DNA of 64,000 bases from Auanema rhodensis (Eukaryota; Animalia; Nematoda): assembly GCA_964057225.1 (NCBI GenBank), contig OZ059897.1, forward strand, positions 15,438,001 to 15,502,000. The letters run 5' to 3'. A program made the position numbers and the translations under genes. Below are positions 31,768 to 58,472 of this stretch, in pieces (position 1 is the first letter of the stretch; each line of letters starts with the position of its first letter). Under the pieces are notes generated by a model, which saw nothing but the letters and a program-made list of their open reading frames with translations, did no database searches and had not been told where the DNA came from.

Positions 31768-34700
31768 TCAGGCGCTTTCATGAAGCATCATCAGGGAGTC
31801 AGGAACCATGCTAGCTGCTTGGCTAGATGGAGTTGGTGGAGCGACAACCTTTTGAAGCTTGGAACTTGATGCAGTTGTTGATGTTCCATTTGTACTGCTG
31901 CTGGCAACAGTAGCTGTAGTAGCAGATGCTGCACCGCCGGCCGATGAATGACGACAAGCGTACAGAAGGCGTCCGGCTGGTGGTAATGCGATCATCAATG
32001 GTTCAGTGTTTGTTTGTATTACTGATGGTTGATCTTGAATGGTCAAAGCAATTGGCTGAGGAAGATCGCGGAGTGGGACTGCTTTTGGCATTACAGCGGT
32101 GAAAGCCGACGTTGTGGTTGGAACTGCAGACATGGAATATGAGTCTGACTGGCCGAGAGGCACAGAAGTGATCTGCAAAAACAAGTATATTAGTAATGTT
32201 CTCTTAAAAAGTGTATACCTCATAGTTTTTTCCTGGAGGTGGAGGTGGATTAGGGGCCAAACTGCGGTAGTATTCTTCACGTTGAGCAACAGTCCAGTGG
32301 GTTGGAGGAGTGGATGATGTACTAGGACGCGCATGCTTTGTCAACGGACTTCCAGGTAGAAGTTCGTTGGACATTCGTTTCAGGCGTCGATTCCAGGTGT
32401 CACGGTATTCTTCTTCCCACCTCTTGTTGTGCTGCATTAATGCTTCTCTAGTCAATGGGATAGAGGAAGAACTCGATCTGAAACAAGTAAAGTTAATACA
32501 AGAATTTTTTGTTTCATGCCCAAATTTTCTAGTTTCCCATAAAGAGCTTAAGAAATATTTTGGTGTCCTGAAGGTCCATGGTTGACCTTAAGTCCCCCCA
32601 GCACCTATCTGACATGATTGACCCTAGGCGGCTACCTTCTTCTCTAGGGTGGCAGGATTGTCCCACGTTGCAGAAAAAGAGAGGCGAAGAGAAAAGGAAA
32701 TAAAAGAGAGAGAGAGATGAAAAGGCCAGGCGAGAATGAGAGGTTATAAGAGAGAAAACGAGTAGCTGGTCAGACTGTTTACGGGTTCTTTCCCTCTTAC
32801 CTCGGCTATTCTGTTTCTATCTCTCGTTCGTTATTCTCTCATTCTCTTCTTTCCACGCGTGTACTGCTTGTTGTTGTTGTGCAAAGACCCTATATGGCCT
32901 TCAAAACGGGACTGGGGGTCCGTGCGACAAACAACCACCTGGTACCAATAGGTCAGCTGGTCAGACAGTACTCATCATTCAGAGATATCAGACGCTCAGA
33001 AGAACTCAATGAATACAAATAGATACATTTGACGATGACTTGCACTTTGACATTGATGAAAGAGAAGAGAAGAGAAGAAGAGATACGAGAAGAAAATGGA
33101 GTATAGAATGCGAATAACACCGTTAACAAGAGAGAGAGTAAAGTGAAAGGTAAGAGTATTCTTATCAGTAAGTTAGAAAGGAGATCATTAGCATAAACAA
33201 CAACCTTATTGTAATCTATCTATCTAGAAACACAGAAGAAATATTTTATGATCATGTCGAAAACTAAAACCATTGCTAGCCGAAAGATTGTTCAAATAGC
33301 ATGTGATGATATTCATAGAAAACTTAATCATATTCAAGCAAAATTCATAAGAGTATATGAGTATATGAATGATATTACATAGTACTAACTCACTGACTAT
33401 ATGTATACCAAAGATAGTTTGATAGAAAGCAAAAAGTAAAGACTGTAGTAGATGGAAACAGCAATATGAATGCTATATGATGCAGAGAACAACAATAATT
33501 CACAATCGTTTGCTGAAGTTGCTGTTTCCCTCGTTCTCTTTATTCTCTTTTTTAGTCACTCTCTGTAAAACAGAAAACAAACGATAGTCATCATCGAGAT
33601 TCCACCTAGTTCTCTTTGTTGTCTGTTTTCAAACCATCTTATGGCGGCAGTAGCTTGCTGTTTACTGGATACAGTTTTTTTTATGAAAGAACACAGCAAT
33701 GGAAAATCTTCTATGGTAGACAACGTGCTTTTCCTATGATTGCCCTCTTTACGGTTCTCTCATTCTCATCTTATTCTCTCTATACACAATCACTCTCGTA
33801 ATATCGATGTTATGCCAAGAACGACAACCATTGTTCCACTCTATTATAGCATGTGGTTGTAGTTCATAAGCCTGACAAAAAGCTAGTTATTGGTCAAAAT
33901 TGTGAAGCATTCTGTCTACTTAGCATCAGTTTGTATGTAAGTCAGTGTGACCCTGGACGTAATTATTCTTTTTTCTTTTGCAACAAGCCAGACATATTTT
34001 TCTTTTTGTTTTCTGTAGAAAACTGTCTGTGGAACATGGTTACAAAGATATGTGATGAATGTTTGGGTTCACTTGTACCCGGTCGTACTTCATCTAATTT
34101 TCTTCATTAAACCAGTTCTTTTCCAACTGGGAAGTACGAGATCAGTAACACTATTTATGTTGACATACAGGCTGATAGAAAGAAGTGAAAACAGAAAAAA
34201 AGGCGAAATAGTAGTTAAAACAGTTTGAAAAAATTCTCGTTTCCCATTTTAATCTGCAAAAGAAGAGTGCAGCTGTTGGAGGTCAAAATTGCTTGGCTAA
34301 AGCGATTGCAGCAGCGGTTTCGGTTTCTTGCCCGAGGCGCCTAAACCACAGCTAGGACGTACCAGGCACCCATCAGACGAGCCAGTGAGGCAGGATGAGT
34401 GAGAAGCTCCCCCAAGCTTACGCAGCTCATCTTTTAATCAATTTTCAGCCAAATAACTAACACAAGAAGCAATGGGAAGTATCAGGACTTTTAAGTAAAC
34501 TTTGAAACAAACCTTTGACTATCTTCTTTAGAGAGACTGGATGAGGAATCATTTCGGATGGGTGATTCTGGTCTTGATTGGGATTTAAGCAATCTATGAA
34601 CATTCTCCAAACAATTAATTTGTGTATAGGATAATGGAAGATCACAAGCTCCCATCAGAGTGGTTTCTTCTTTAACAGTTCCTGAGATAAGCTAAAATGA

Positions 34701-37700
34701 AATTTATTACTCTGTTTTCTTAAATAAAGTATATACCTTAGACAGTTGTTGTCTGTCAGTACCCGTAGATGTATGAATTGGTGGCTGATTTTGAACCACC
34801 GGAGGTTGTTGTTGTCCGTTGACTACGAGAGTTTCAACGATCCGGTCTATGTAGGCTCCGAGATCAACAGGCCTGGACGTCTGATGAAAGATCGTGGACA
34901 GACGTCCTGCTGCTGCGGCAGCCACGATGGCACCGTGTGGAGCTTGCGTGGCGCCTACGACTGAAGACGGGTTAACAGCAGTTACGGCAGCCGTGTTGGC
35001 GTTCAGAACTCGATGTGACGTTACTGAATCAGTTGCTTGGAGCTCGTAAGGAATTTCGGTGTTCGGGTTTTTCTGATGACCGACACTTGCGGCAGCCACG
35101 GCGGACGACGATTGATGATGGTGATGGTGATGATAGTGATGATGGTTTCTGTTGTTAGCAACAGCTCCAGATGATGGGCCAGTTGATCCGAGAACAACAC
35201 CACTGCTTCGGGAAGATGACGGCACTGGCTAAAAAGATATTACAGTCAGAATCGGCGAAAACTTCATATTGTTGAAAGCTATGTCTATTCTAGTTATTGC
35301 TTTTCCGAAAACGGAAATCAGGGTAGAGAATGTAAGAGTTCAGCTGGTGTGCCAGCGAGGAGATAGTTAAAGCATTTGATCAGGATAAGTAGCAATTATG
35401 CAAAAAAATGAGAAAGGAGAGAAGAGTCAAATGAACTTATGAAGGACAAAGCACAAAGGAGTTTAAAGCAAATGCGTTGAAGCTATAAAGCATCACTGGA
35501 GAGAAGTTCACAAAGTGCGAGTGCTTTTTTGATTCACGCATGATTTCTTGGTTAGTAAGCATATAAGCTTGGCATATTAGCATTTTTTCGTGAAAGCTAC
35601 TCTAACTCTAGCAGAAGCAAAACTAAAACATAGAAAGCATATATAATTCTAAATAATCAATGAATAATTGAAGACATTTAGAATTTATATAAATGACTGG
35701 TCAATGAAGGACAGTAGTGGGAAGCTTTCATAGTACTAATATGCAGCTATATTAGATGACCAAACCAGACAGTCTCTTTCAATTCTTTCACTAGCTTAGC
35801 TATCTTCTACAATACTCTTCTATTCTCTTCACTTCTCTCACAGCTTGTGTGTGTAGAGAAAGGTTGTAATCGAGGATGGCTAACGACGCAATGGCGGAAG
35901 TTGCTCGACACGCCTCGAACGGAGAAAAGGAGAATGCTTTATTCATTCTTAGCCTTTTCTCTTCATACAATACGTTATATAGGCCATTCTCTAATATTTC
36001 TATCTCTACGTTCTATGCTTGCTCTTCATTGCTGTCTGTGTATAATATTGAGCATATATATGTATATCTCTTTCTCTCTCCCTCTCTCTCTCTTTCACTC
36101 TCAGTATGTCTATCTATCTCTCATCTCCCTCCCGCAAGGTGTGTGTCTAGATGTGTGTATGCTTCGCAACGTAAACATAGTACACGGAAGGAACTGTGCA
36201 ACCGGCTGGCTCATTTGCTGTAGCCTACTATGGCCGGCTATCATGTCCTGCTGAACACCAAGTAGTAATCGAGGGAAGTTCAAGGAATAGTAAATGACGA
36301 AACATAAGCAAATAATCGATTTTAATAGTGATAGTTAGTATATATAGTAGATGTATATAGGAGAGAAAAGTTGATAGAAGGTACTTAGTAAGTAGGCAAC
36401 ATTCGAACATAACACAGTGCGTAAAACTACATATATGTATATGTATGTCTTACTCATATATAAAGATATTGAATGTATATTATATACTATAACGTTATAT
36501 ATATATATATATATATATAAATATTAGTAATTTGTTTAGATGTAGAAATAATAGGATTATAGTAAGGGAACACGAGTATGAAATAGAAATAACTCAAAAT
36601 AGGAAAGAAAACTAGCAAAATTAATGTGAAAAAAAAACCAAAAAGATTAGGAAATATGAATCAAGTCATTTTGCTTGTACATAAAACATAGCGAAAAGTG
36701 TGTCTGGTTCTGTTTCTGTATATACGGACTGTGCCATGTCAAGATTCCAGATTTATCAGACTACGAGACCGACGACAATATGAACTGTGAACGTCAACAG
36801 ACACACGTCGTACTCTCTACCAAACCGTTCATAACAACACTCAACACAGGGCCATTCAGGTACCCTCGGGGGCGGAGTTGAATACTTGCGCACTACGGGC
36901 CATATTAGGCAGAAAGGGCGGGACAATAACATAGGACAGTGTTGTGGTGGGAGGCTGGTGGTTGAGAAGGCAAAGAGAATAAGGGAAGAGAAACAGATAG
37001 AGAAAGAAAGAGTAAAAGAGTAGAAGATGAGAACCAAGTAGTGAAAACGTGATTAGGTTGGTCTGAAACAGTTCCATTTTCTCTCTCTTTCTATTTCATA
37101 TAAACAGGGAGAGAGGAAAAAAGCATTTATGTATATATCCAAAGAGAAAGAGAGAGAGAAATGTTTTTCCTAATTGTTTTGAACATATAAGTATAAATAT
37201 GCAAGTTTCGAATAAATAAAAATTATCTAATTCAATAGTCTGAACTTTTATTTCATAATCTCTGATATTCTTTCTCAAATCAATGTTTTATATGAACTGT
37301 ATAGACTAGTACGAACTATGTGCTAAACAGACACATTATCCATATAAAATGAGAAGCTTGATGGTAAGAGCACTGTTTGTAACTTGATATAGAGATAAGG
37401 GGGTAGCACTGCTTGGCCCACGCATCCGGCAAAGATGAGGCGTCAGTCATCACAATCGTTAAAGAACCATATGTTTCAAAAAAAATCAGAGAATAATAAA
37501 AGAAAAAAAGATATTCTCAAAGAATAAAATAAGAATAGATTGAGCTGTAGGGCAGCATTTTTTGAACAAAAAAAAAGAAATTTAAATCAAAACTATAGAA
37601 TGTGTTTTCAATTTCAGAATAGACAATAAACATTTATAAGAAAGGTAAATTAGTTGATTGGAACATGAATGATACTAGTTAGCATTAACACTTAAAACCA

Positions 37701-40700
37701 AAAGTAAGAAACGTTGCACACATTTTTTAGATTAGAATTTAGTGGTGAGAATGACATTTACTTTTCTATCAAACTATATATAAAGAAAAAAAAGAAATAG
37801 ACGATTTGTGATTGAATTAATATGTTAAAGTTGAAACTTATCGTGAATATTGTCGTGATTATGTAATCATTTTCACATCAAGTTATCATCCTGATCAATA
37901 AGATTAATGATGTCGTATAGCTGATAGATTGGAATACATGGCTTAGATCATAATGCGAATATGCATGTCTCAACTCTCCGGACTGTTAAGTCCCGCAGGG
38001 CAGCAGGACAGCAGCCGGAGAGTGAGTAGCACAGTAGCGAATACGGAAGTAGTGAAACGGTTAAGCTTTAAAGTTTGTAGTACGGACGACGGAGAAGCTT
38101 TTCCTCTTAAAACGTTTTCGTATCTCGCGGGTTTCGATGTCGAGTAGAGGGAACCCTGAGGGAAGGCGTGACAAGAGCCCAGATAAAGAGATGGAAAACC
38201 TATAGAGAGAAAGAGAGGCTATTAAGAGAGTGGGAAGATAACACCGAGTCGAAGAGAGAGCTTGTTCGAGCTCGACTCCTCTCTCTTGTTCTCTTACTCT
38301 TTGTCCATGTCTCTTCTCGCTCTGGTTTAGTTCGCGTAGTGGCGCTGACGGCTGATAGTGGTATGCTGTGCCCGCAGGGGGGTAGTGACCAGCACACCCC
38401 AGCGCCCTCCGTGCCAGTTGAATCGGTCGGCTTGGCCGGCCAGCAGCCCAAAGTGCATGCCTGCGCACTCTCTCATCAGAGGGAACTATCTCTGGCCAGC
38501 ACAGAGCGGCGCCGACGTCCTCCCCCATGCCCGAAAGCCGTTGACTGGTCTCCGCCTCCTGTCCGGTCTCGCTTCCCTCTGCTAATATCCATAGTGTTTC
38601 CTCAATGTTTTAATTCTTTTCTCTACTTCCTCTATTTCATAACGAATATCTAATCGAATATATTCGAATATGACGACGACAATAGGGTCTCGACTCATTG
38701 GGATCGTCGGTCACTACAAGTGGTTTTCAGAGTGCATGTACTATGATGTTGCCGGTTGATTCAGAAACTCATTGATTTAGAAGTGCATATGAATATGATA
38801 AACCTTTAGAGAGCACCCATCCAAATGATATATCAGAGATAAACAGTCAGTCTGGTAACACATCAATTGTGAATCAGTTTTTCATTTCCACTCTTTCTAG
38901 AGCAGCAAGCTACTTGTTTTACTACTAATAGCGTGGCACACGTTCACACATTAGCTAGCAAATATGTGTTAGTGACGTAAGCATATGCCACGCATGATGA
39001 TAAAACTAAGGGGTAGCTCTTATAACAGCGTTGTCATATCTAAGCAGGCTGTTATAATATTTTCAAAACTCGTTGATCAGCTTACAACAGAAGAACATGA
39101 TGTTGAGATTAGACGTGCCAGGCATTTCCAGCAACTGATCTTTGAGCGAATGCCCTTAAAGGACAGATGGCCGAGTACATGTGCCAGCCAGTGATAGGAA
39201 AGGGAAAGCATAAGCTGGACAACTGAACTTTATTATGAACTTGTTGGTCATTCAAATTGGTTTTACGAGCTAATAGAAGGATAGAATGAATTAAACTAAG
39301 AAATTGCAATCCAGATGGACAAAGAGAGATGAATAAAGAAGTAAAAGTGTTGAATATGACATTCAAATTATCTATAAATAGAATAATATTGCGGAAACTA
39401 TAAAAGTATAGTGCATAATTATAATTTATGCGGTTGGATAACTTATAGGAAGTTATATTTTACAATTAATGTATTTTCTGAGCGCATTTGAAAAACCTGC
39501 TGCCTTGCGTTCAAGCAATGTAACTCGGTAAGATGTGCCTAAGACATTAACAAGCGTGATTTATTATTCAAGTTTTAACAATGTTTTCCTTAGGTCCCTC
39601 CTTTTGCGTTGTTTAATTGTTTAAAAGGAAATGGGTATTCCCTATCTCTCACCTCTCTTGTCCTTTGCCCTTGTCACAATTGCAGAAGCTAGCGTAGCGA
39701 CGATGTCGTGTTCGCGTACGCGGCAGTATGTGGGTCGTGGGGCCTGGTCGTGGCAGGCCGTTCCTCGCCGTGGCGACACCGCCATGGACTCTTCACAAAT
39801 GCTCTTTCTCTCGCATTCTTCTTAGTCTCTCACCATCTAAACATGTTCAAGCTATGGTTTAACGCCAGTCTTTCTTTTGCATCAGACATGTTTGATGATC
39901 TGAGCCTCCGTTTACGTTACGCTGCTTTATGGAAAGTAGTTGAGTGTGAACAGACTCAATGAGAGAAACATAAATACCGATAGACAGAGTGATAGAGAGA
40001 GTGAGAGAGGGAGAAAGAGAGAGAGATATATATAAGAGATTTTGATTGCATTCGCAATCTTCGTGCAAGATATGTTAGATCGCTTGCTCTTATTCTTTTT
40101 GCTCTCTCAAATTATTCAAGTTTGAATAAGTTGCACGTAAGGGTGTAAGAGAGATAGACATTTCGTGTACCCGGCACGCACTTTCACGCATAATTCCACA
40201 TGCAGTTACGTGAAATTGAAGACAATTCATGATGGAATTTCTTTCGTTTGTCATCAAACATTACAAAATTTAAATGTTTCAATCCAAGAACAGTTGAAAT
40301 TGCGAAATTCTTAAATGATCGAAATGTTTCGAACTGTATGGAACTAAAGCAAACGTATGGAACTAGTATGAGATATTCAGAATGTTGTAAGGGGTGCAAT
40401 AGCAATAACATAGATAAGCAGCAATCAAACTAATTTTAAAGACATTAAAAACTTGCCGTGCTCATCAAGCTTCTGAGCTCATCTTCAAATCCTTTAGCCA
40501 TTTGTGGTGGTAAAGTATTAGATGGTTGATTTGGTAGTGGATCAGCTAATACATTAGCATCTGAATAGCAGAGATTAAAATCTATTTCTATACTTTTTTG
40601 AGCAAAGGGCTAATTAAGATGGACTTACCTCCAACTGGAGCATCAACTATCCTATGAAGAGCGACAATCATCTCCATACGTTTTGTCCATGGATTGATAT

Positions 40701-41945
40701 AAGCCGACCATTGGGTTTCAGAAGTTAAAAGGGCACCATTGTGCGCCACAAGACGCAGAGATGACATACTCCGAACAACTTTTCCACGAGAATTGAAGAC
40801 TGAAAAACAAAAATATACGAATTGCTTGTGAACCAAAACAGTTATCAGATGCTATTATAAAGTTTTAAAATAATATATATGAATAAAACATACGATCAAA
40901 GTGAGCTTGTCTAACGATATGTACGTCTGGAGCGTAAATGAAGCTAAGAAAAGATCGTCCCAAAATGTCTGAAGGCAAATGCCCCAAATATGGTATAGAT
41001 CTGAAATATATGATTTAATATTAGTGCATAAATACAGTATAAAATAGAAAAATATAAGAAAAGAGGATCTAAGATCGTGATGAATCGGACAAAGCCGACA
41101 CATTTTGATCAAATTTGCATAATCGGCTGAAAGGATAACTAAAGGAATCAATGCGAAAATAGCCTGAGTGATGGAACATATCAATGTAACATCTTATTCT
41201 TTAATGCAATTGATTCCATAAGCTTATATGATACATAAAGAATCAAAAAGAGAAATTAAATTAATAAACTTACGAATTGTCAATATGTGTTACAGTACAA
41301 GCAGCTGAATGCCTTGTCATAAAACTGATAGGCAAAAATGGAGCTGAAGGCGTACAAGCTGGCCGTATGGCCAAAGCTGTGATACTGACGCTATGACGAC
41401 CTTCGAATTGACAGAGAAGCTCACAGGCAGCTGCTACTGGTCCACTGAAAAACAGTAACTTGTAGAATAACAAATGAATTGCATGAAAATTGTGGATACA
41501 GCCTTATTGCGTAAAAGTTAAAGTGAAAATGAATTTTTGACGTGACTACGTAACTATTGCGCCGTCACGAATACACGCTTATTTGTAGATTTTTTTAAAC
41601 TTCCTCATAAATTTAGTTGTTTTGTATCTTAGATAATTCACAAAAACTATGATAAAACAAGGAAATAAATGGGGAAATATTGATTAATTATAAAATATTT
41701 TAAATTATAAAACTTTGTATGTATGTAAGACATTGCAATGGCTATAACGATGTAATAGATGAAACTGAATCTGTATCGATATTATGCATATGCGTAGGCG
41801 TTGTAAACGCTTCGTCAGGACTTTCCCTAAGCATTTGCTCAATTCTAATGAGCATTACGGCTTTGACTGTGGTCCCTCGAGGGATACAATCCAGGGTGGT
41901 CAGTTAAGCCACTCTGGTTGTCCTCATCTATCTCTAGAATCATCC

Positions 41946-42007
<62 letters not shown>

Positions 42008-42444
42008 ATACAATTAGTATTTTCGTTATTCTATATCCCTCTTTGCTTGTCTTCATCATCATCGTCTTCATCTCTTCCCGACCCCCACCCCTGAGGCATT
42101 GCTTGCTTGTCCGAGCTATACTGGCCTCCTTTTATGTGTTGTTCCTCTCTGCGTCTCCGCCAAATTGCACTTGCAAGTCACCGACTGGCACTGACCAGCC
42201 TCTCTTCTCTATACTCTAACGCATATCGTGCATTATGCTGTCTGCGCTCTAAGTTGTTACAACATTCTCTCAATTCGTCAGCGCCTCTGTTGTGTCTCCT
42301 TTTAGCATATTGTATCATATTTCCCACGTAGTTGAATACTCAAGTGTGAATGACCAGCTAGGGTGCAAAAGAAGACAATGCTGTAGAACAGAGAGATGCA
42401 ACTGAGAGATATAGAGAAGAGAAATTGAATAGAACGAGAAATAA

Positions 42445-42477
<33 letters not shown>

Positions 42478-45033
42478 TATGGTATGAGCATGAGTGTAAG
42501 TAGGAAATGAAACCAAATGAGTTTAATCTTATAAGGTTTCATGAATTCGCTAATCTAAATACTCAATATGAAACCAAAAGCCAATTAATTTATGTTATTT
42601 AATAAAACTGAAAAGAAAAATATTAATTGAAAAAGGCCAAAGCACCGAAGACTTCCAAGCTTTTTGTGATATGTAAGAATAATATTGAACTAATTATCAT
42701 TTGAGTGTAAAAATAGTTAATGTTGCAGAAATTTACACAATAATATATTATATCTCTTGCATATAGTTTATCCAATATAATAGATTATTGATTATACTAT
42801 TGACAGATGTTGGAAAAGCTTTTATTTCCTCTTTAGCTCATTCTTCCTCACATCCAATCTCTCATTCAAGCAGACAAAAGAGGAATTGTGCCGCATCAAA
42901 TGAACTTTGATGAAGATGAGAGACAGATAGATAAGAATAAAATATAAATTTCAAAAAACTTAAGAAAACTTACCATTTAAGGCGTGAAAAGATGCGTTGT
43001 TTATGTGTAAATTGAGCTACCGTCAGTAGATGAGATGGAGCAATGCCGTCAAGCAAAGGAAATAGACTCATACCCGTGTGTAAATGCTGAAATAAGAACA
43101 TATTTTTACATATTATCTAATAAAATCTATTAAAAAATATATTATTTTTTTAACCTTTCAAGCTTAATAGTGTTGTTATGATCTTTATGTCCCTGAGTTT
43201 TCTTCAAAAAAAAAAGGTTTTAAAGCGATTTTTAGGTTCTTTTTGTTTGTTTTTTCGTATACTAACGATGGAAGTCATTTTTTATTCTCGCTTTTTCATG
43301 TACACGTTTCTTTTTCCAAGTTTGAGCACCGAAAATCACTTTGCTCAAATGTGCGACGTGCGAAATCGAGAAGCCGATTTCTCCTTCTCAACTGTGTCGT
43401 TCTACTTCTCGCTCTTTACCTCAATCTATACGTATCCATCTACGTTTGCTTCATCGTTTTTCTTTGTTCTTAGTTTGATCTATTTACGGCCAAGATATAT
43501 GTACGTTAAAATGGAAAACGATTTCAAACTGAGCAGAAAGAGAGAGAATTCAACGTCTTAAACCTTTAGGTTTCGTTCATTCTTACCAGCCACGACTCGT
43601 CAACAATTTGAAGCGTTGCGAAGCACGACGATATTAAAGCCTCTCAACCATTTAAGGAGAATAATTGAACACGAAGTTTCAAAGTGTTAAGTCACGGTAA
43701 AGCCATTCAAATGCGATCGCTCTTTTCTTTCACTGTCTATGTGTCTTCGCTATCGGCGAAGTTGTCTTCTTATTCATTTAATCCTCATGAAAAGTTCAAA
43801 TGAATTTCTCTGATTGATTTCGATTACTCAATCAACACAGGCTTCATTACAGCTTCAATCCCCTTTACTCACCAGCTCTGGTCTGAGATAAGATTAAGAA
43901 CATTTTTCTCAACTTTATCTCGACGAATGATGAAGCCTGACAAGCAGTGCCAGTGTTCGCTTGGCTATTCTGACTGCTTTGCAATATACGAAAACATCAG
44001 CCTCGTAATTCGTCTAAAATCATGCTTTTCAAAGGCCGTATCGTCGTTTACCAGGATTCAGATAACCAAATGACTGGCAGGGGGACAACAGTTGTCTTTT
44101 TCTGGAGTCATCATGCTGGGTGGACATCAAAACGGAGTTGTTTATGAAAAAATAAATTGCACGATCAGAAGAACAAGTATTCTGATATATTTCTACGCCC
44201 CTAGTTTTCCTCTTTCTCGTTACTTAAGTTACTCGTTATTTAGGCCTTCTGAATAGCTTGCAATAACAATAATCAGGAGTCCCTTGTAAATGTGAATTGG
44301 CCTTCTGTCTCTCCTTTTCTCTCATGTTCTGTATGCTTTGTTAATAAGAGTAAATGCAGTTTGAGAAAAGCTAGGTCGGAGCTCCCTTAGGCGGTCAAGA
44401 ATCCCCGCCTAAGAGATGAAGACATTGAGAGAAGAGCTTAGTCTCACAAATAAAAGAGAGAAATTGAGTGAGAAAGATGCAGGGTAGTGACCATTATTGG
44501 TCATTCTCATTCATTCGAGCCCACAATCTGCTTCTACTCTCATCATAGCCTGCGGCTGTCTAAAGAGTTCTTTGAGCTCTCCTGTTACACTCCCGATGGA
44601 AAAGGAAATGCAAAGGAATAATTTAACGAATGAGAACTGATACCTTACAAAGGTTAAGCTTGATTTGTAAAAGCCTCTAATGTTTTATTTTACTTGGATA
44701 ATTACTTAAGTAAATGGAAATTCGTATTGTTCATGGTTGGACAACCATTAGATGCGAATGTGTGGTCATTTGCTTGCTCTCTACACTCAAAAAGCAAATT
44801 TTTACCTCCGGCCCAATTTGCTCCGACGTGATGCGTGCTTCCTGAATAATTCCATCTGGCATATCTATTCGAACCGTAAACAGATGTCGACTATCTTTAT
44901 CTTCATTCTGTTGTTCGGAACGATCTTCAGCTTCTGACCACGTATGAGGAGGTGAGAGCTCTATACCAGCAGTACCGCTGGTTACGGCTCCATCCTTCTT
45001 AGGGCAGTCATCTGCTGTTGATGAGTCGTCACT
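31768..45033 (-). CDS. lin-42: LIN-42 Period homolog. Exons 45033-44806, 43086-42974, 41444-41274, 41000-40894, 40799-40629, 40560-40457, 35228-34737, 34691-34513, 32477-32219, 32172-31768; initiating exon upstream of 45033 not resolved
   Basis: PAS region (LSPPHTWS, ACELLCQFE, SIPYLGHLPSDILGRSFLSFIYAPDVHIVRQAH, WSAYINPWTKRMEMIVALHRI), SYQ motif LSYTQINCLENVHRLLKSQSRPESP, LT motif PLTREALMQHNKRWEEEYRDTW; all junctions in phase. Confidence 0.93.
41951..42004 (+). repeat. (TC)n microsatellite in lin-42 intron
   Basis: Uninterrupted TC dinucleotide run of about 27 units. Confidence 0.95.
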
Positions 45034-47592: not shown

Positions 47593-47632
47593 GGACGGAC
47601 GGATGGATGGACGGACGGACGACGGACGGACG
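47593..47632 (+). repeat. (GGAC/GGAT)n tetranucleotide tract
   Basis: ggacggacggatggatggacggacggacgacggacggacg followed by a G run. Confidence 0.85.
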
Positions 47633-47812
47633 GGGGGGAGTCCCCCTTCGTCGACCGACTGGTAGAGGGTTGTACGACGCCGCCAGCAAATGCAATAAGG
47701 TCAGACAGCCGCGAACAGCCCGGTACGGACAGATCAGACAGAGAATGAGAGAAAAGTAGAAACCTACAACGACGACGATGAAGAAGGTGAAGAAGGTAGT
47801 GAAGAAGTTGGT

Positions 47813-47842
47813 GAAGAAGAAGAAGAAGAAGAAGAAGAAGAA
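47813..47842 (+). repeat. (GAA)n trinucleotide microsatellite
   Basis: About ten tandem GAA units. Confidence 0.9.
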
Positions 47843-49701
47843 CGACGACGGCTACGTTAACGACAACGTCGTAACTGATCAAGAGAATAGAATTAAACGT
47901 GGAAAATACAAGAAGAAATATGAATATGATAGTTAAAGGTTGTTATAAATCAGAAAGAATTGGCAACGTTTTTAAAAGTTTTTAGGCAAAGACGCAAAAA
48001 AGTGTAAAATCTATTGAGCTACAGGTTTAATTTGAAAGGTGTGAGGGCACATGGAGGGAATTTGAATGATGTATTCAAACGAAAAAAAAAGATTTAAACA
48101 TTATTTCTAAAGCAAAAACTTGTTAAATACGTTGAAAAAAAAGAATTGCAGGTGTTAGTTAACCAAGAGCACAGTACTAAATAGTGGATACAGTGCAAAA
48201 AAAAATTAAAAGTGAGAGATACACTGGAGAGAAAAGATCAAAAAAAAAAGTTTTTGAAAATGAAAAGGTCATTTGAAATTTGAAAATAAAAATAAAATAA
48301 CTGAATTCTAATGAATTTGAAAACTTTTTTTTTGCTTTTCTTCATCGAAATTTTTTTTTTCAGAATAAAAGTGTGTGGTGAAGAAAAAAATCAGAAACAA
48401 ACAATTCTTCGCGATTGCAATGGGATAGAATGGAGAACGAAGAGTATATGTGTGAAAAGGGACAACGCAAAAAAGCGAGAAAAAACGCTTGTTTGTTTGT
48501 TTATTTTAAAATTTCTATTTCTGAAAAAAGTAGGATTACTTAATCCAGATATAAATTACTCTGGAGTGGGTTGAAGAAATATAGAAGATTAAACATATCA
48601 TGATTTAGAAATGAATGAACTGAAGTTTATTGACGTGACAATAACTTTGGAAGCCCTAAGGGTTAAATAACCGGCCACCATGTTGAGGAGAATAGACTAG
48701 ATCGGGCTAGAGACTGATATGGGGAAGGGCCGATTGACCGAGCCTTCACCCACATCTTCAGTCGTCATCGTCGTTAGTCGTACCAGCCAGGCTGACCCGT
48801 AGACAAGATAATCGACGATGAGAAGACCTAAGGCTTTCGTGCCCTGATCAGAGATGGAAGAAAATGCTTTACATGGTTACAAGTCAGTTGCAAAGGGAAA
48901 TACGATTGATATACGCTGATACGGAAAATCGTGAAGGAGATCTCGCAGATACAGAATCTTTTGGATATTCGATATCAAATTCTGAGCTGTCAGTTTGCGC
49001 TTGATGATCAGTGCTGGTCAGATACCACAAAACTTGAAACATGTAAATCATTAAAGAGAAACTCGAAAATACGAGCAGAATTGGTTATATCAACCTAGGT
49101 GCTCTCTCTCATGTATTTTCATTACAATGATATTGAACAGGAACGTCCTCAATCTCTCGTCATCAGCATCATCTGCGGGCTACCTTTCTAGCACCTCTGA
49201 ATAGTTGCCTTTGAATTTCAACCATCTGAACCTCACTCGTCCGTGCCTGACACCATCAGAGAAAAATGACCACAGATGATTGGAGAGACAGGACGGACGA
49301 TGGACTGGACAATCAAACGACCGTCCATCCATCCGCCAATACACAGCTAACCGCGATGGCCTGCTGGTGTGTATACTGCTGCTGCTCCTGGTACAGCAAC
49401 TTGACTAGTATGACTACTGCTGTGTCTTGGGACGACAACATGCCCTATACCACAAACAGACACGCACAACAGATTCTTTACTCCATAACAAAAAGGTTTG
49501 CGGTTGCTGGTTAGCATTGATGTGCCCATTGAAGGACAAAGCAAAGCCTTCGTTATCGAATTGGCATTTCCCAAATTTGAAAGAAAAATGAATGAGATTG
49601 ATAGAGTTAGAAATGAGAAATAAAAGAAGAGAATATTGAGAGAACGAATGGGATAGATTTCGAACTTGCATTCACCTTTCATAGAAGATTGGTCGAAAAG
49701 G

Positions 49702-49736
<35 letters not shown>

Positions 49737-52700
49737 AGAGATTGAAAAGCAATTTCTTTATCATGTTTCAGACAGTTCATGATGTTGAAAACCTAAAATC
49801 TGCACTTTATGAACAATCAGAAAAAAATACTTTAAACATATTGATGAAATGGTCAGGTAAATATAAGATCGGCATCATGGTCATCAACATTGGGGGGAAA
49901 AAAACTTTAAAAACTGGTATAAAGGAGAAACCGGAAAGGAAGTACAGCCTTTGATTTTTTTTCAATTGTTATACAGCCACATTAATACTATATTAGAATA
50001 TACCCTCAAAAATCAAATATAATATTGTTACTAAGTCAAATGAATAATTTCTTGAAATATGAAGTAACCAGAGATCTACATGTGTCAAATTATGCTTATT
50101 ATGCTTATTATTATAAAATGAATAACCAGAAAACAACTTGAATTATAGAAAAGATAAACATTTCAAAGAGTATTGACGCTAGCTTAGAAACAAAGCCGGG
50201 CTAAGATCCAGGAGCAATATGAAGCTAAAGTTGATGCTGATGAACAGAAAATGATTGGTTAAAGAAGGATTGGATGACAAATTGCTGTCTAAGATGGTTA
50301 AAGACAATGAACAAAAAACAATGAAGATAAAGTCCACAAAGAACAAGCAACAGTGGAGCAAAATCGTTTCGGGAGAGCGTAAGAGAGTTTGTGATGGAAC
50401 TAGTGTAAGTCAGCGGCGAGCACGCGAAAAGCAATGATTTCGACTATAAGATGATCGGAAAGAAGGAGAATAAGAAGAAGAAATACTACAGAACAGTGTG
50501 TGATTCGTGAGCAAACAGATACCGAGTAGCCATCAAGCGAAACCCAGCGGTCTAGTCGATGACCACGATCATCTCTTATTCGCTTGTGTGCTGCTCGTTG
50601 ACGGTGTCGTTCGCTCATGTCTCTGTTGGACGCATGTCATCGTTGCGTTGTTGGAGACATCGTTTCAGCCGTTACGGAATTTATGTTGGCGCTTATGAGC
50701 AAGAGCTTGTTAATCATGACGGACAACAAGTTAGTGATTGGAGATTGACTAGAATTAGTATTCCACATGAAAAAGCTTATAATGAATCATAAAATGTATA
50801 AAGCAACATTCTTTCAAATGATTTTTTTCAAAAATTTGAAACAAAAAAATAATTTTTTACACCCATAAACAAGCAGACATCAACAACAGACATTTATCAA
50901 AAAAAAAAGGAGACAGAAGTGACTGAAAACCGTCTGAGTGGACGAATTTCGAGCTTGAGAACTTAAGGATGAAAATTATAAGAGGATCCGTTTAGTGAAC
51001 CATAAAAGAACTGAATGCTACAATAGTGAGATGCTGCTACGACAATCGTGAAACCGACTTGAAACAGTGAATTTGACGATTGGAATCGAATATGCATCAC
51101 AAGATCGTCAATTGCGACGTGCGAGATTAAGAACAATGAGAAGACGATGACTAAAGCTAGAAACACGAAGGTTGCATCCCAACCACAAAGGTAGCATATC
51201 GTCCACAAAATACAGGAAAAGGATGAGAAACAGAGCAATTATTAAAGAAAAAAAGAATTCTGTTCTTCTGGCTAATCTAAAGTATTTAATGGACAAAACT
51301 GTATCTATAGTATTGATGGCGATAAAGAGAGAGAGAGAGAGGGAAAGAAGGAGAGTGTGACAAAGAGAAAGGGGGGTATGTCTGGAATATAGGACGGATA
51401 TAGCTGCAGGCTTCAACACAACAAATAGAGATAGAAGGAAAATGTTATGAAGAACAAGGAATATGAGATAGAATGTTGAAAACGACAACTTCTGTATGAT
51501 TACGAATTGAAGACAACAAATACAATGAGAATGAAGTAAAGATTGTGTCATCATATCAATCGAATTATTGTTTAGAATTACAATATGATATTAGGTTGAT
51601 AAAGATCTAATGTGATATGAAAAAATTTAAAAAATAATTTTAAGATAATTCATTCTATTTCATAATTTTTCAAAAAAAAAAAATCAAATTCATATAAAAC
51701 CAATTGATGATTGTTAAAATTTCTGATGAAAAATGAAAGAAAACGGGAAAATCGAGAAGAAAAGCTTCGAAGTTAAATGAAAGTTGGGATAGAAATAGGA
51801 ATGAATTCTAGATCAAGAATAGACTATTGCTGAGGGAAAGCTGGAAGACACAGAGGGTGCAAAGAAGAAAAAGCGAAACAGGCAATGAGAGAGAGAGAGC
51901 GTATAAGCTGAAGCGAGGGAGAACTGTTCAAGTATCTCATATACGATCTCTATCTTTAGATCTTATTCTCGACATCATTATATGAAGCTAGAACTCTCGT
52001 AGACGAACTGGGTGATGGGCTACGAATAAAAGCACCGGAGGGCTAGACGGATAGAACAAGAGAGTGGAGGAGAGGGAAAGAGAAGCGTCGCCTGTCGTTC
52101 CAGGGCTGGAAAATGAACAGCAATGAACGGGAAAAGCAAAGAAGATGAGAAGAATGTGGTTGATAGACTATACGAGAATAGGAGATGTATCAACTATTCA
52201 TTACTATAAATTGGATTAAAGTTATAAATCAATAAATAGCCTGAGGGCAATAGGAACAAATAGATAACCGACGGTAAAATCAGATGATCTCTTAGGTTAT
52301 GTTCAGCTGTTAAATAATGTTGAAGATGCTTATCCTGTTCTTTCAATCCGTATCGTCTGAATATCAGTTCTGGATTGTTGAATACATGAATACACTAAAG
52401 CAAGATGGGCCAATACTACGATATAATGATCAAATGGCTGGTATTCTTTCGTGCTTACTTAGATAAATACATTCACATATACACGGATTCAGATTTAACG
52501 GAACTTGAAAGAAAGTGAAATCGTGTAAGAATTGTAGCTTCAGCAGCAGAATTGGACATCAGTGTCCTCAGTGAATAGTACGAGTAGTCAAGATACGACG
52601 GAAAGCCTGGTGGCCGAAACGGAAGAAGCTGGACCGCCAGAGCTTTTTTGTGCCCGATGAGTGACACGAACGCCCTGAGGCTATAGAAGAGGAGGAAAGA

Positions 52701-55561
52701 GAGAGAAAGAGCGAAAGAGGCAAAATGTGCGTGTGTTTGTATGTTCGTTCTCTCGTTCTCTCTCTACATTTCTGTGCTTGGAGTTATATCTATCACTGCT
52801 TTCGACCGCTGTATTGGTCATAGGGTCTGCTTGTGGGGCAGGCTGCTAGTTGGTACTGAAAGGGAGAAGGAGACTAGTGTTAGTGAAGGGAGTCGACACG
52901 CTTGCAGACTGACCAGTTAGAGAGGTACAAGATTCGTGATGTTTTGGTGAATATCAGACAGACAGATGAAATTCAGGCCGAGAAAGAGAGACGAACGCTT
53001 GAGGGGGCACGGAGAGCCAGAACGAACTGAGAGTTGGACACAGGCTTACATCTCTCTCCTTCTTTCTCTCCCTCTCGTTTTTCCCATGTCTTCTATCTTG
53101 TTTTGGACTCTGAGAGTAAGCGTAATCAAGAGAGAGACTCCAGAATTGCTGGTCCTAACCCCATTCGCTCACTATTCTCTGACAATTTTTTCCTTCGCTC
53201 TCTTGCTTTTCTAGCTTTTTCTCGTGCTCTCTCACAACTACTAGCCCGCCAGACTACAACCCAATAACGGATGGTCGGACAGCACACCCAGCCACGACTG
53301 GCTAATGAGAGAGCTTGGGACACGAAGAGGGTTGGAACGGCAATCGCGATAACACACTCGGACATGAGGCAGCAGACATTTAGACGATCAGACAGCATCC
53401 GATATGAGAGTGTGTTAGACAGCTTGGCCGTACCTAGCACGGTCGTTTCTCTTTCCTCGTTCTAGCCTGCTAAACCAAGTCCGTCTCCTGCCTTCTATCA
53501 TTATTCCTCTCCATCTCACCCTCTGCTTTTCTCTCCCCCTCATCTCTCTATATCATTCATCTGATGAAATTGGTAAGCTAATGTTCCATGATACTCGAAC
53601 CATCATATGAAAAATACGAAAAATCGTTCAAATCATCAAAATCTTAAAGAAACATTTCATTCGGATATGTTTCATTCGAAACTCGGACAAAGCGTTCCCG
53701 ATTAGAAATGTTCTATAGAAATTGTGAAGTTTCAGATTCTCAGAAAGTTTCTTTGAATCTGATATACACAATCATTTGTTTTGAAAATACGTCATTCTGC
53801 CTCACTAAATCATACCATCGTTGATTATAGATCGATAATCTGAAAATCTAAAGAACTTGTGTTAAGTTTTTATTTAAAATTTGTAGTCATGGAAGCCGAA
53901 TGAACGGAACAGCAGAAGTAGATTAACTAGACGATGAGATGATTTCCAGCATATACTTAGTAGTTTTAAACTACATTTCAATATATTTTCTAAAATATAT
54001 TAATATTTATTATTAAATAATTAAGAAACATACATATTTAAAAGAAATAATAATATTATTTAACAATTATTTGATTAGTTTAAGGATTTTGGATGAAACC
54101 TTACCTGATTTTTGATTTGATCATAAAACTTCAAATCCAACATTTGTTTTCAAAAGAATTATTAATATTCAATTTTAAAATAATATTATAAGTAAGATCA
54201 ACAAATAGAAAAGAATGAGATATATAATAATAGTGAAAGACATTTATAGTTAAAACATATGAATAATTATAAACAAAAATTGACATTTATGTATATGTAT
54301 ATATCTCAATTTAGTCATCAATACATCTCTTTCTATTTCAACCTGTAAAACCTTTTCAACTTCTTAACCGACACCAAACTACTTTACCAGGTTTCTCTCT
54401 ATTTCTCTCTTACTTTCTTTCTTTCTCCCTCTATCCTCTTCTCTCTCTCTCTCTCTCTCTTTACCAATCTCTCACTCTTTTATATATCTCTTCGATCCAC
54501 TAGCGTGAAAGAACTACGACGACGTGCAAATGCTGGAATAGCTAAAACAACGAGAAAAACGACGACGTGACCCAGATGGTAGCCAGCACGATCCTTACAT
54601 CGAGCCAGGCGGTCCCACGTCGTGCCTCGTTCGAAACAAAAAGGTCAGGACGTTTCAATATAGCATGATATTTAACTCGAAAAAAAAAAAGATAAAACTG
54701 CTGCATATATTTATATGAAGAAGGGAAACTTTTTCAAATTAAATCTATATGTTAATGATAATTATGCGAATATATCAAGAAAAACTTTAGTTATGAAGTG
54801 AACTTTATAGAAGAAAGTTGGCAAAAAAACTGTCGAGTAATCAAAGAATAAGCAGTTTCAGTATTAACAGAAATAATTATAAATTTCAACAATAAATTGT
54901 TTATGTTTTAAAAAATGCTGATATCATCATAAAACTTATCGAAACAAAATAAAAACATAACGTAAGAAATGTGTAAAATTATAATTAAATTTTATATAAT
55001 TTATTATAATTACATACATATTTCTTTATTTTAAGTAAACTATTCAAATTATTTAATTGAAGATAATGTAGTAGACATTCAACATTTTGAAAAATTCATA
55101 TTGAAAAATCTGTTGTTTTGCCAAATGTGTCTTATCAGTTAATTCTTAACAAAATTTGAACGAACGCTCTAAGACAAAATGGCCGAATAAGCGATATAGA
55201 GAGAAAGAGGGAGGAAGAGATAGAGAGAAAAGTGGAGATAGAGATAGAATGAAAGTAGGAGGTAGATAGATAGTAGGATAGTTAAGAAGACAATGCTTTT
55301 GGTACTTTGTCTTGATATCAAAGAAAGAAATTACTTTTATATTTCTTTAAACGACAATGATATATGTATATATGAATATATGTAACTTGATGATAAACCT
55401 CAATGAATTTCGTATGAAACATTTTGAAACAAAGAAGAAAACAAAATATGTTAATATATAAGAAAATAAAAGTTCATAAAAGGTATAACATGATGTTAAA
55501 ACTGTCTTGTTCCTCCCCTTAAACCCTCAAACTATCTTCTTGCTATCTTCTTATTCTCTTA

Positions 55562-55637
<76 letters not shown>
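55562..55637 (+). repeat. (CT)n microsatellite
   Basis: Long CT run with two interruptions. Confidence 0.95.
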
Positions 55638-58472
55638 ATCAATCATAATCATATTATTGACTCTTTTTCATTTCACGTCTAACTATCAATATTTCCTATT
55701 TTCTCTCAATCTCTTTGTCATAGTAATATTCTCACTTTATATCTTTCTCATTGTATGCCTTAGGCTATCCGTTAAGGAAGTGTCTTTCCGTTTGCCACAC
55801 ATAGACCTCCCAAACAGCTAGGCGTACCAGTTGGAACGGAATGGCTCCATATCTTTACACCGTTTTTCTAAACTTTAAAGAGCACTATATATTTTATTAT
55901 TATATATATAATAATAATTGATTACTTTTTTTTAAAAAAAATGAATGATTCAAATGTAAAAAAAAAATTAATAAGTGATTAATATTCTAATAAAAAATCA
56001 ATAATTTCATTCAAAATTAATTCATTTTTAATATTAAAATAAATAATATATTATGTTAGTGATAATATTATTATATACAAATAATACTATTCTTTTTGTA
56101 TATTTTTTTAGAATTTAGATAGTTGATAGACAGGATTATAGTTATATTCATTTATCAAGTTGAGAATATCAGAGAGAAAAATTTGCTTTTATATTCTAAA
56201 AAGATAAATTTTTTGTTCGTTTTTCATGTTCTTTTGAAATAATTTTAAAATAATATCTCGATGAACAAGACAGTTTGTGCTGGCCAACACTGTTGCCATC
56301 ATTCGTTTTTGGCTCCGCCTGCCTACAAAGTCTTAAGAAGTGGATTTTATAATTTCTGATGGTAATACATCTATTAATAAAATAAATTTCCAAATTTTTT
56401 TTTTGTTTTTGGTGAAATGAAATTTATCCATAAATCTCTATGTAGTATGCATGGACAATCTGATATATAATAATGAGAATAAAAGAATAATTATAATAGA
56501 AAGTACGGTAAAATAGAAAACGTTACTACTTGAGGGCAAATGTGATATACTAACGAAGTTGACATCTTCTTTCAGGATTCTCTACAACTAAAGACCATGT
56601 TCTTGGTTTTTGTGAAATACTCATTCGTATCTTCCTCTTTCCCTTTCTCTCTCTTTTTCTCTCTATCGCTGTATCCCTCTCTCTCTCTCTATCTTTCTCG
56701 CTTTCTATCAATCTAATTCTCTTTCACTTTATATCTTATTTAACCTTCTTTATCTCACTCTTATGTTTAAGTTCTCTACTTATTCTCATTTGATCGCCAA
56801 GCGCAAAGTGCAAATGTCCTCGGCAGGGCGGTACCAGGAGGAGGAGGAGTTCGGATTGGATAGAAATGGGGCAAGGCTCTGAGCTGCCTGGTGCTGGCTG
56901 GCGGATGCCAAATTAGTGCCTAATTCGAACAAGGAGAAGAGAAAGATATAAATGAGGTTCATGAGAGAAGACGAAGCAAGAGAAAGAGATGAAATAGAGA
57001 GGGAGAATAGACTTTAAAATATTTTAAAATGGAAAAGATGCTGAACATGAAAAGTTAAAGACAATTGGGTATTAAGTGAATCCCGAATGGATAAAATGAT
57101 ATAATTAGACTTACACACAGGTATGAACGGATACAAGAATGTATTTGAAGCTCTAAATTTCAAAAAGAGCTTTATTGAAGATTTCCTTCAATAGATTTAA
57201 GTGATGATTTGTTTCTGAAAACTTCCATCTTATAGCTGGATTAAAAGTATATATAACAATTTATTTGATTCAAAAAATGAAAAATATATTATATTATAGT
57301 ATAGTATATAATAACTACATTTAATAAAATAATAGATAACAAGTAGTTTTTCTTTTAATACTTTTCATAATGACAATTTGAACAAAAAATAAGATTTGAA
57401 GCTGTAACAAAAGGGAGAAAACGAAATATTTTATTTAATCTAACAATTTAAAATTTTTTTTTGCATTTCAAAAATAAAAAAAAGGAAAATACAAGTTCAA
57501 ATTTTATTAGATTAAAATTTAAAAAATCTATCTTGTGTCTAATAATAAAAAGTATTTGAAGATGAAGAAGAATTTTTTGAATCTTTTTTTTTCTCTTAAA
57601 ACTGATCAATGTAATCGTAGATTCAACAGAGAAAAAAAGAAAAATTCAAATTCTAAGCCAGAGTGGATTGGTCGGCAGATTGAAAAAAACCTGAAGAATC
57701 TCCGCGCCGAGAGACATTTTTTTCAATGTTTGATTAAATTCTCATAAATCTTAAAATAATGATATAAATCAGTTAAAATCTATGTTTAATGTTGAACATA
57801 TTTATAAAAAAAATTTAAAATATTCAAAAAAAATATAAATATATTATTAAAATAATTAATTCATATAATTAGGAACTAAATACTATTAGTGGAATGAGTC
57901 ACTGAATAAAGTTTTTCTTATTCATTACTCTTTTAAACCTTTTACTCACTTTCTCATCTCTTTCTCAGGTAAGGATATTAATTATTTAAAAAATTCACAC
58001 AATTTCTTCATTAGATTCATTCATTAAATATTAAAATATCATGTCAAAATCATAACTTTGAAGAACATTTTTCTTTTTCTGCTGATAGATTATTGAAAAA
58101 AAAATTTTTTGAGAAAAAGAAATATTTTTATAATTTAAAATCTAAAATTTAATATTTTTTTCCTCAAAAAACGTTATTTAAAAATAAGCAAATTCGAAAT
58201 TGTTATGAGGAACAAACTAATTTATATTTTTCAAATATAACTAATTATTTTATAATTTACTTTTCAAATCTGTGTGTCTGTATCTGTGATGTGTATTACG
58301 GATGATTTTTAATGGATTTTTCTGAGACTTACTTGAATGATTAATCTTTTTTAATTTCGAGTTGTTTACTATTGAAAATAATTAACAATGAGATGCAAAT
58401 AATAATTTTATTAATAATAATATTTAATGTTTTTTACATTTTTGAGGACAAGTCCTAGAAAACAGTCTTTCC

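What the first reader, a model, noticed from the sequence alone, without database searches (positions are those of the whole stretch)
32939..56837. Homotypic array of 14 MYRF-type CTGGYAC sites across the lin-42 locus
Seen: exact CTGGYAC/GTRCCAG at 32939, 34359, 35349, 38411, 39115, 39181, 42185, 43947, 46627, 47118, 48780, 49388, 55824 and 56831, all non-coding, while I noticed only about four copies in the rest of the window, three of them in exons. A rough composition estimate predicts only 2-3 in this interval. Most lie in short GC-richer islands near (GA/TC)n tracts. Established: CTGGYAC is the reported consensus of mammalian MYRF, which binds as a trimer; nematode MYRF-1 is needed for larval progression and lin-4 activation. 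Inference: the locus is a distributed multi-enhancer array that reads MYRF pulses to drive once-per-stage lin-42 transcription, and this AT-rich genome exposes a motif grammar (GA tract + CTGG-core sites) that is harder to see elsewhere.
Basis: partly seen in the sequence, partly recalled or inferred. Interest (0 to 1): 0.82.

Follow-up and report, generated by a model that had tools for sequence, protein, structure and literature searches.

The report
Conserved MYRF-type site array at lin-42
The nematode clock-like gene lin-42 carries 14 exact copies of the 7-base motif that vertebrate MYRF binds. The excess recurs at lin-42 in most other nematodes examined, which gives a sequence-level explanation for the recently published finding that MYRF-1 binds and drives lin-42 in C. 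elegans.

Summary
All 14 CTGGYAC sites lie at the stated coordinates, against 1.8-2.9 expected under Markov or local-GC models. Single-base variants sit at background, apart from the C/T choice at position 5 and CTGGCTC (6 against 2.5).

The gene is a true lin-42/period orthologue on the minus strand. Every site lies in an intron or upstream of the gene.

The excess recurs at lin-42 in other nematodes:
- C. brenneri 14 observed/2.4 expected, C. remanei 7/2.5.
- Two Pristionchus species 17/2.8 and 16/2.5, Mesorhabditis 5/0.7.
- Two strongylids are weak.
- The pooled total over eight clade-V loci is 84 against 19.7 (P about 5e-27), while flanking DNA shows 15 against 10.5.

In an unbiased scan of 28,672 patterns, CTGGYAC was the top non-repetitive one.

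The MYRF reading is plausible but indirect. Papers from 2026 show that C. elegans MYRF-1 occupies lin-42 more strongly than any other locus and is required for its expression. The regulatory link is therefore already known. Those papers report a GA-repeat motif for MYRF-1, and I found no paper that applies CTGGYAC to nematodes.

The "GA tract next to each site" grammar is not supported at site level. GA repeats are enriched across the whole locus.

The same scan also noted a second motif, TGACCAG, on this stretch.

The parts
32939..32945 (+). CTGGTAC site, in the intron between the SYQ exon and the LT exon of lin-42
34359..34365 (-). CTGGTAC site, in an intron about 190 bp downstream of the SYQ exon
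35349..35355 (-). CTGGCAC site, at the 3' end of the large intron between the PAS half and the SYQ/LT half
38411..38417 (-). CTGGCAC site inside a 63% GC island in the large central intron
39115..39121 (-). CTGGCAC site, large central intron
39181..39187 (-). CTGGCAC site, large central intron, 66 bp from the previous site
42185..42191 (+). CTGGCAC site directly abutting a TGACCAG copy, in the intron between PAS exons
43947..43953 (-). CTGGCAC site, in the intron between PAS exons
46627..46633 (-). CTGGTAC site about 1.0 kb upstream of the 5' end of the mRNA (trans-splice acceptor)
47118..47124 (-). CTGGTAC site about 1.5 kb upstream
48780..48786 (-). CTGGTAC site about 3.1 kb upstream
49388..49394 (+). 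CTGGTAC site about 3.7 kb upstream
55824..55830 (-). CTGGTAC site about 10 kb upstream, 188 bp from a 75-nt (CT)n tract
56831..56837 (-). CTGGTAC site about 11 kb upstream, at the distal edge of the GA-rich domain
45559..45639 (-). lin-42 first coding exon: ATG at 45624, preceded by a TTTTAG acceptor ending at 45640, probably an SL1 trans-splice site (inferred)
   Evidence: RNA-like contigs join 45559-45645 to 44806-45033 across a GT..AG intron; translation
44806..45033 (-). lin-42 exon 2 (start of PAS-A)
40451..41470 (-). Block of four PAS-domain exons (about 41470-41279, 41011-40895, 40851-40606, 40576-40451)
   Evidence: tblastn with LIN-42/Period proteins of eight genera; phmmer hits
34548..34898 (-). 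lin-42 exon carrying the SYQ motif; the open frame extends up to 35228
31771..32542 (-). lin-42 LT-motif exon (32542-32207) and C-terminal exon (32184-31771)
31000..57000 (.). Domain in which GA/TC dinucleotide repeats are concentrated; it coincides with lin-42 and its upstream region

Best explanation
The 14 CTGGYAC heptamers are functional transcription-factor binding sites. They are spread over the upstream region and introns of a lin-42 (period) orthologue, and the excess recurs at lin-42 in several other nematode genera. The most likely binder is the nuclear N-terminal trimer of the membrane-tethered factor MYRF-1, using the same core that mammalian MYRF recognises. MYRF-1 enters the nucleus once per larval stage, so many dispersed sites would load the locus heavily. 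That would account for lin-42 being the top MYRF-1 ChIP target in C. elegans and would drive one pulse of lin-42 transcription per stage. LIN-42 protein then binds MYRF-1 and shuts the pulse off. Shown here: the motif excess, its sharpness, its non-coding location and its recurrence across genera. Shown in papers, for C. elegans only: MYRF-1 occupancy of lin-42, dependence of lin-42 on MYRF-1, and the feedback loop. Inferred: that MYRF-1 contacts these heptamers.
For: The window holds 14 sites against about 2.3 expected. CTGGYAC is the best non-repetitive pattern in the interval. The variant matrix is largely flat apart from Y at position 5. The gene is lin-42. The excess in upstream 10 kb plus gene is 14/2.4 in C. 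brenneri, 7/2.5 in C. remanei, 17/2.8 in P. entomophagus, 16/2.5 in P. fissidentatus and 5/0.7 in M. belari. The pooled count over eight clade-V loci is 84/19.7, P = 5e-27, while flanks show 15/10.5. In an unbiased scan of 28,672 patterns over six loci, CTGGYAC ranks first among non-low-complexity words. CTGGRAC and CTGGYAD are flat. Four C. brenneri/C. remanei site pairs share their immediate flanks in introns that otherwise mostly do not align; one pair swaps C for T at the Y position. A copy in a neighbouring coding exon is not conserved. The mammalian consensus is [G/C]CTGGYAC and most bound sites there are single copies (PMC3742440); here the -1 base is G/C in 9 of 14 sites. In C. elegans, lin-42 is the strongest MYRF-1 ChIP target and needs MYRF for expression (10.64898/2026.01.27.701908; PMC13167726).
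Against: There are no binding data for this motif in any nematode. The C. elegans ChIP study derived a GA-repeat motif with a trimeric layout, and recombinant MYRF-1 bound a 44-bp GA-type element. CTGGYAC is not mentioned there, and the sequence of its 'secondary motif' is not given in the text held. No trimeric or fixed-spacing arrangement of units surrounds the sites. The excess is weak in the strongylids Dictyocaulus (5/2.0) and Ancylostoma (6/4.5). Strand bias runs in opposite directions in the window and in Caenorhabditis. I could not test other MYRF-1 targets such as lin-4, let-7 and nhr-23.
Confidence: 0.68

Rival explanations
1. The sites are a real, conserved cis-regulatory array, but they are read by a different sequence-specific factor of the moulting or heterochronic network, such as a zinc-finger or other protein of unknown specificity. 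MYRF-1 would reach lin-42 through the GA-repeat elements instead.
For: The published C. elegans MYRF-1 motif is GA-rich and was bound in vitro. GA repeats are strongly enriched over the same locus in the window and in Pristionchus. No trimeric layout surrounds the heptamers.
Against: The motif matches the mammalian MYRF core at every position, including the Y degeneracy and the requirement for the last C (PMC3742440). When it was described, that core matched no other known factor motif (PMC3742440). ROR, FTZ-F1 and Grainyhead-type words are not comparably enriched. NFI-type half sites would not require the final C or accept T at position 5.
Confidence: 0.22
2. The excess is a statistical or compositional artefact, arising from GC islands, neighbouring-word effects or a motif chosen after the fact.
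For: High-order Markov models raise the expectation to 5.3 at order 4 and 8.4 at order 5. These models are over-fitted on 24 kb and include the sites themselves.
Against: Local-GC expectation is 2.4-2.6 and block shuffles reach at most 9. The result survives correction over all 28,672 comparable patterns. It is replicated independently in four other genera, with flat flank controls and flat near-miss controls.
Confidence: 0.02
3. The copies come from a dispersed repeat or transposon family, or they act at the RNA level as an intronic splicing or stability signal.
For: Eleven of the 14 window sites are on the transcribed strand. Two sites (34359 and 55824) share about 17 nt of downstream sequence.
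Against: The flanks are otherwise unrelated. Six sites lie upstream of the mapped 5' end of the mRNA, although some outron transcription upstream of the inferred trans-splice site cannot be excluded. In Caenorhabditis 18 of 21 sites are on the opposite strand.
Confidence: 0.03

Closest known systems
Mammalian MYRF binding sites ([G/C]CTGGYAC) in oligodendrocyte enhancers (Bujalka et al. 2013, PMC3742440; Kim et al. 2017, PMC5436001)
   Same: The 7-bp core is identical, including the C/T choice at position 5. Sites are mostly single copies. They lie in introns and distal elements of target genes.
   Different: The host is a nematode and the target is lin-42. The three-unit inverted-repeat 'Myrf motif' of Kim et al. 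is not visible around the sites. Binding was not tested.
C. elegans MYRF-1 to lin-42 activation with LIN-42 feedback (PMC13167726; bioRxiv 10.64898/2026.01.27.701908)
   Same: The gene is the same and the regulatory logic is presumably the same. In C. elegans, lin-42 is the strongest MYRF-1 ChIP target. GA repeats, which form the reported motif, are also enriched across the locus here.
   Different: Those studies report a GA-repeat consensus and do not mention CTGGYAC. The present evidence is purely sequence-based, comes from another species, and shows the heptamer array recurring across genera.
Homotypic clusters of transcription-factor binding sites in developmental enhancers
   Same: Many copies of one motif lie within one locus, well above background, and the count is maintained while individual positions turn over.
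   Different: In the window the sites are spread over 24 kb, spaced from 66 bp to 6.4 kb, rather than packed into a few hundred bp. Pristionchus does show tight sub-clusters, such as 5 sites in 200 bp.

Membership tests
lin-42 / period orthologue | PAS domains of the PERIOD type plus the SYQ and LT (CK1-binding) motifs, in that order | tested here: met
   A PAS exon hits CBN-LIN-42 and proteins annotated 'Period'. tblastn maps all parts colinearly on the minus strand. The SYQ and LT motifs were read.
MYRF response element | Sequence matches the core CTGGYAC, with G/C preferred at -1 | tested here: met
   There are 14 exact matches. The -1 base is C or G in 9 of 14 sites and is never T.
MYRF response element | Motif is over-represented in regulatory DNA of a known MYRF target relative to background | tested here: met
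   The window shows 14 against about 2.3 expected. Eight clade-V lin-42 loci show 84 against 19.7, and flanks show 15 against 10.5. lin-42 is a MYRF-1 target in C. elegans (papers).
MYRF response element | Three degenerate units in inverted arrangement, matching trimer binding (Kim et al. 2017) | tested here: not met
   Partner units with at most one mismatch show no preferred offset or orientation within +-40 bp: 18 found against about 16 expected. There is almost no information beyond +2.
MYRF response element | Occupied by MYRF in vivo, bound in vitro, and mutation abolishes the response | not testable with these tools
   No ChIP, EMSA or reporter data exist for this species or for this heptamer in nematodes.
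C. elegans-type MYRF-1 GA-repeat element (PMC13167726) | GA-rich repeat with three elements in regulatory DNA of the target | tested here: inconclusive
   GA/TC repeats are strongly enriched over 31-57 kb. The published matrix is not available in the text held, and GA tracts are not closer to the heptamers than chance allows.

The most novel reading that the evidence does not exclude
CTGGYAC, rather than the GA repeat, is the sequence-specific determinant of nematode MYRF-1 binding. MYRF specificity would then have been conserved from nematodes to mammals. The rank of lin-42 as the top MYRF-1 target would be encoded by a homotypic array that selection maintains by count while individual sites turn over. 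The GA repeats would be an accessory, locus-wide chromatin feature.
Probability: 0.4. Interest if true: 0.65.

Novelty: new member of a known kind. Interest (0 to 1): 0.55.

Why it matters
The MYRF-1/LIN-42 loop was proposed in 2026 as the core timer of nematode larval development, but its cis-regulatory code was described only as a GA-rich motif of modest predictive power (AUC 0.78). A sharp heptamer identical to the vertebrate MYRF core is the strongest non-repetitive sequence signature of lin-42 loci in several genera. It offers precise bases to mutate and a simple genome-wide predictor of MYRF targets in non-model and parasitic nematodes. It is also evidence that MYRF DNA specificity is ancient.

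Tried and rejected
- **GA-tract coupling.** Distances from the sites to (GA)n tracts equal those of random positions in the interval, so I rejected the site-level grammar.
- **Paired or trimeric sites.** No preferred spacing or orientation appeared.
- **Co-motif search.** AGCTG occurs downstream in 7 of 62 sites against 1 expected, which is only marginal after correction.
- **Other oscillator motifs.** ROR, FTZ-F1 and GRH words are not comparably enriched.
- **TACRGTA.** It looked enriched but is equally enriched in control flanks, so it is a genome-wide feature.
- **Rfam scan of the window.** No hits.
- **Failed look-ups.** Necator (P0138), Steinernema (P0014) and Nippostrongylus (P0143) returned nothing.
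- **Supplements.** The supplementary files of the two motif-reporting papers are not held, so I could not compare the published MYRF-1 matrices or EMSA probe sequences.
- **Species identity.** Organism names are coded in the run search. The organism is a clade-V nematode whose LIN-42 is nearest to those of strongylids and Heterorhabditis.
Full report
**1. Observation**

A both-strand search finds 18 CTGGYAC matches in the 64-kb window. The window-wide expectation from dinucleotide shuffles is 4.3.

For the 23.9-kb interval, Markov models of order 0-3 predict 1.8-2.9 copies. Expectations from local 100-1000 bp base composition are 2.4-2.6, and shuffling within 100- or 200-bp blocks never gave more than 9. 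The GC-richer surroundings therefore do not explain the excess.

I tested the look-elsewhere problem directly. Among the roughly 28,700 possible 7-mers with one Y/R position, only simple repeats score better: (GA)n, (AT)n, trinucleotide repeats and poly-A. CTGGYAC has P = 2.8e-8, or about 8e-4 after Bonferroni correction.

The motif is sharp. Most single-base substitutions sit at background; the exceptions are C/T at position 5 and CTGGCTC, at 6 against 2.5. G follows the motif in 7 of 14 sites, and the preceding base is G/C in 9 of 14. The flanks are otherwise unrelated, so this is not a dispersed repeat.

**2. What the locus is**

A PAS-domain exon (40851-40591, minus strand) finds LIN-42/Period proteins of Caenorhabditis, Mesorhabditis, Pristionchus and strongylids. 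tblastn with these proteins maps a colinear set of exons on the minus strand:
- 45033-44806
- 41470-41279
- 41011-40895
- 40851-40606
- 40576-40451
- 34898-34548, carrying the SYQ motif
- 32542-32207, carrying the LT motif
- 32184-31771

Contigs from four runs that look like RNA join 45559-45645 to 44806-45033 across a GT..AG intron. The upstream exon has an ATG at 45624 and is preceded by a TTTTAG acceptor ending at 45640. This is probably an SL1 trans-splice site, but that is an inference.

Every one of the 14 sites is therefore non-coding:
- Two lie in the SYQ-LT intron.
- Four lie in the 5-kb central intron. In C. elegans that intron holds the internal lin-42a promoter (my own knowledge, not tested here).
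- Two lie between PAS exons.
- Four lie 1-3.7 kb upstream of the 5' end of the mRNA.
- Two lie 10-11 kb upstream.

It is a clade-V nematode whose LIN-42 is about 45-80% identical per exon to those of strongylids and Heterorhabditis.

**3. Recurrence in other species**

I fetched lin-42 loci with 10-kb flanks from other nematodes and counted CTGGYAC in the upstream 10 kb plus gene. Expectations use an order-2 model built on the same DNA.

| Species | Observed | Expected |
|---|---|---|
| C. brenneri | 14 | 2.4 |
| C. remanei | 7 | 2.5 |
| P. entomophagus | 17 | 2.8 |
| P. fissidentatus | 16 | 2.5 |
| M. belari | 5 | 0.7 |
| D. viviparus | 5 | 2.0 |
| A. duodenale | 6 | 4.5 |

- With the window included, the eight clade-V loci hold 84 sites against 19.7 expected (P = 5e-27). 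Their flanking control DNA holds 15 against 10.5, which is not significant.
- An unbiased scan of all 28,672 one-degenerate 7-mers over six loci puts CTGGYAC first among non-low-complexity patterns. The next patterns are its one-base neighbours.
- The near-miss controls CTGGRAC and CTGGYAD are flat. DTGGYAC is mildly enriched.
- C. brenneri and C. remanei non-coding DNA barely aligns: 18% of the upstream-plus-gene stretch lies in HSPs, apparently mostly exons. Even so, four site pairs share their immediate flanks at matching intron positions, and one pair swaps C for T at the Y position. A copy inside the neighbouring Rap-GAP coding exon is not conserved.
- In Pristionchus the sites form tight intronic sub-clusters at matching positions in both species.
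- Outside clade V the signal is suggestive but inconclusive. A. viteae shows 3/0.8. G. pallida shows 4/0.8, with an unexplained 6/0.8 in the neighbouring genes.

**4. Who binds it**

The heptamer is the mammalian MYRF consensus [G/C]CTGGYAC. There it was validated by mutation and pull-down, and most bound sites carry a single copy (PMC3742440).

In C. elegans, two independent 2026 studies performed MYRF-1 ChIP-seq.
- One reports that lin-42 shows the strongest occupancy of all targets, that lin-42 transcripts collapse without MYRF, and that LIN-42 feeds back on myrf (10.64898/2026.01.27.701908).
- The other shows MYRF-1 peaks at lin-42 and the heterochronic miRNAs, reporter dependence on myrf-1, and physical binding of LIN-42 to MYRF-1 (PMC13167726).

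The second study derived a GA-repeat consensus described as "dimeric or trimeric" (AUC 0.78), plus an unspecified "less repetitive secondary motif". It showed recombinant MYRF-1 binding to a 44-bp GA-type element. Neither paper mentions CTGG, and only four papers in the library contain CTGGYAC, none on nematodes.

The present data fit a model in which MYRF-1 uses the vertebrate-type core. This remains an inference. The trimeric inverted-unit architecture of Kim et al. (PMC5436001) is not visible around the sites.

**5. The GA-tract grammar**

GA/TC repeats are strikingly concentrated in kb 31-57 of the window and are also enriched at lin-42 in Pristionchus. This matches the published GA motif at locus level. 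Within the locus, however, the heptamers are no closer to GA tracts than random positions. They do lie in GC-richer islands: 0.449 against 0.365, P = 0.0002. The "GA tract + CTGG core" composite element is therefore not supported. Co-enrichment over the same regulatory domain is.

**6. Verdict**

- The array is almost certainly functional cis-regulatory DNA (confidence above 0.9).
- MYRF-1 is the most likely reader (about 0.68).
- An unknown factor is the main rival (about 0.22).

The regulatory relation is already known. Two things appear new: the vertebrate MYRF core is the dominant sequence signature of nematode lin-42 loci, and it is maintained as a homotypic array. I file this as a new member of a known kind, of moderate interest, with clear experiments to settle it.

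The same scan also recorded a second recurrent word, TGACCAG, on this stretch (note s1-422611). I confirm 12 copies against 1.7 expected in the window, and 6 against 1.2 in P. entomophagus, but no excess in the other species.

Noticed in passing
window 32766-52910: A second recurrent word, TGACCAG/CTGGTCA, has 12 copies in the lin-42 region against 1.7 expected. The extended form GCTGGTCAG occurs 5 times against 0.1 expected. One copy abuts the CTGGCAC at 42185 and one lies in coding exon 1 (45609). It is also enriched in P. entomophagus (6/1.2) but not in Caenorhabditis, Mesorhabditis or Dictyocaulus.
   Followed up: partly
window 26400-30000 with 31771-45640; L004 1-19493; L006 2104-18898: lin-42 lies next to the TOP3B topoisomerase gene in the window (tail to tail), in Acanthocheilonema viteae (tail to tail) and in Mesorhabditis belari (TOP3B upstream, same strand). 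This is an old microsynteny with one inversion.
   Followed up: no
window 45559-45645: The RNA-like contigs end at a TTTTAG acceptor with one mismatch and 4 unaligned letters. That is what the 3' end of an SL1 leader would give, so the true promoter lies further upstream in the outron that carries four of the sites.
   Followed up: partly
window 38000-38650: A sharp GC island (63% GC around the site at 38411) lies in the middle of the 5-kb central intron. It is a candidate internal promoter for a short, PAS-less isoform like lin-42a.
   Followed up: no
window sites; L001 and L002 sites: Strand bias has opposite sign in different lineages. In the window, 11 of 14 sites read CTGGYAC on the transcribed strand. 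In C. brenneri and C. remanei, 18 of 21 read it on the other strand.
   Followed up: no
window 34359 and 55824: Two sites 21 kb apart share an extended sequence of about 17 nt downstream of the heptamer, ending in TAGCTGT. Pooled over species, AGCTG occurs within 25 nt downstream in 7 of 62 sites against 1 expected, which is marginal after correction.
   Followed up: partly
L001-L004 and window flanks: TACRGTA is 3- to 8-fold over-represented both in lin-42 loci and in control flanks of Caenorhabditis, Pristionchus, Mesorhabditis and the window. It is a genome-wide word bias, not a lin-42 feature.
   Followed up: partly
L007 1-8179: In Globodera pallida the two genes upstream of lin-42 carry 6 CTGGYAC copies against 0.8 expected. 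Either regulatory DNA extends into them or this genome has a general excess.
   Followed up: no
L003 13816-17273; L009 13746-16646: In both Pristionchus species the sites form three tight intronic sub-clusters at matching positions, for example 5 sites in about 200 bp. These would be convenient compact enhancers for reporter tests.
   Followed up: partly
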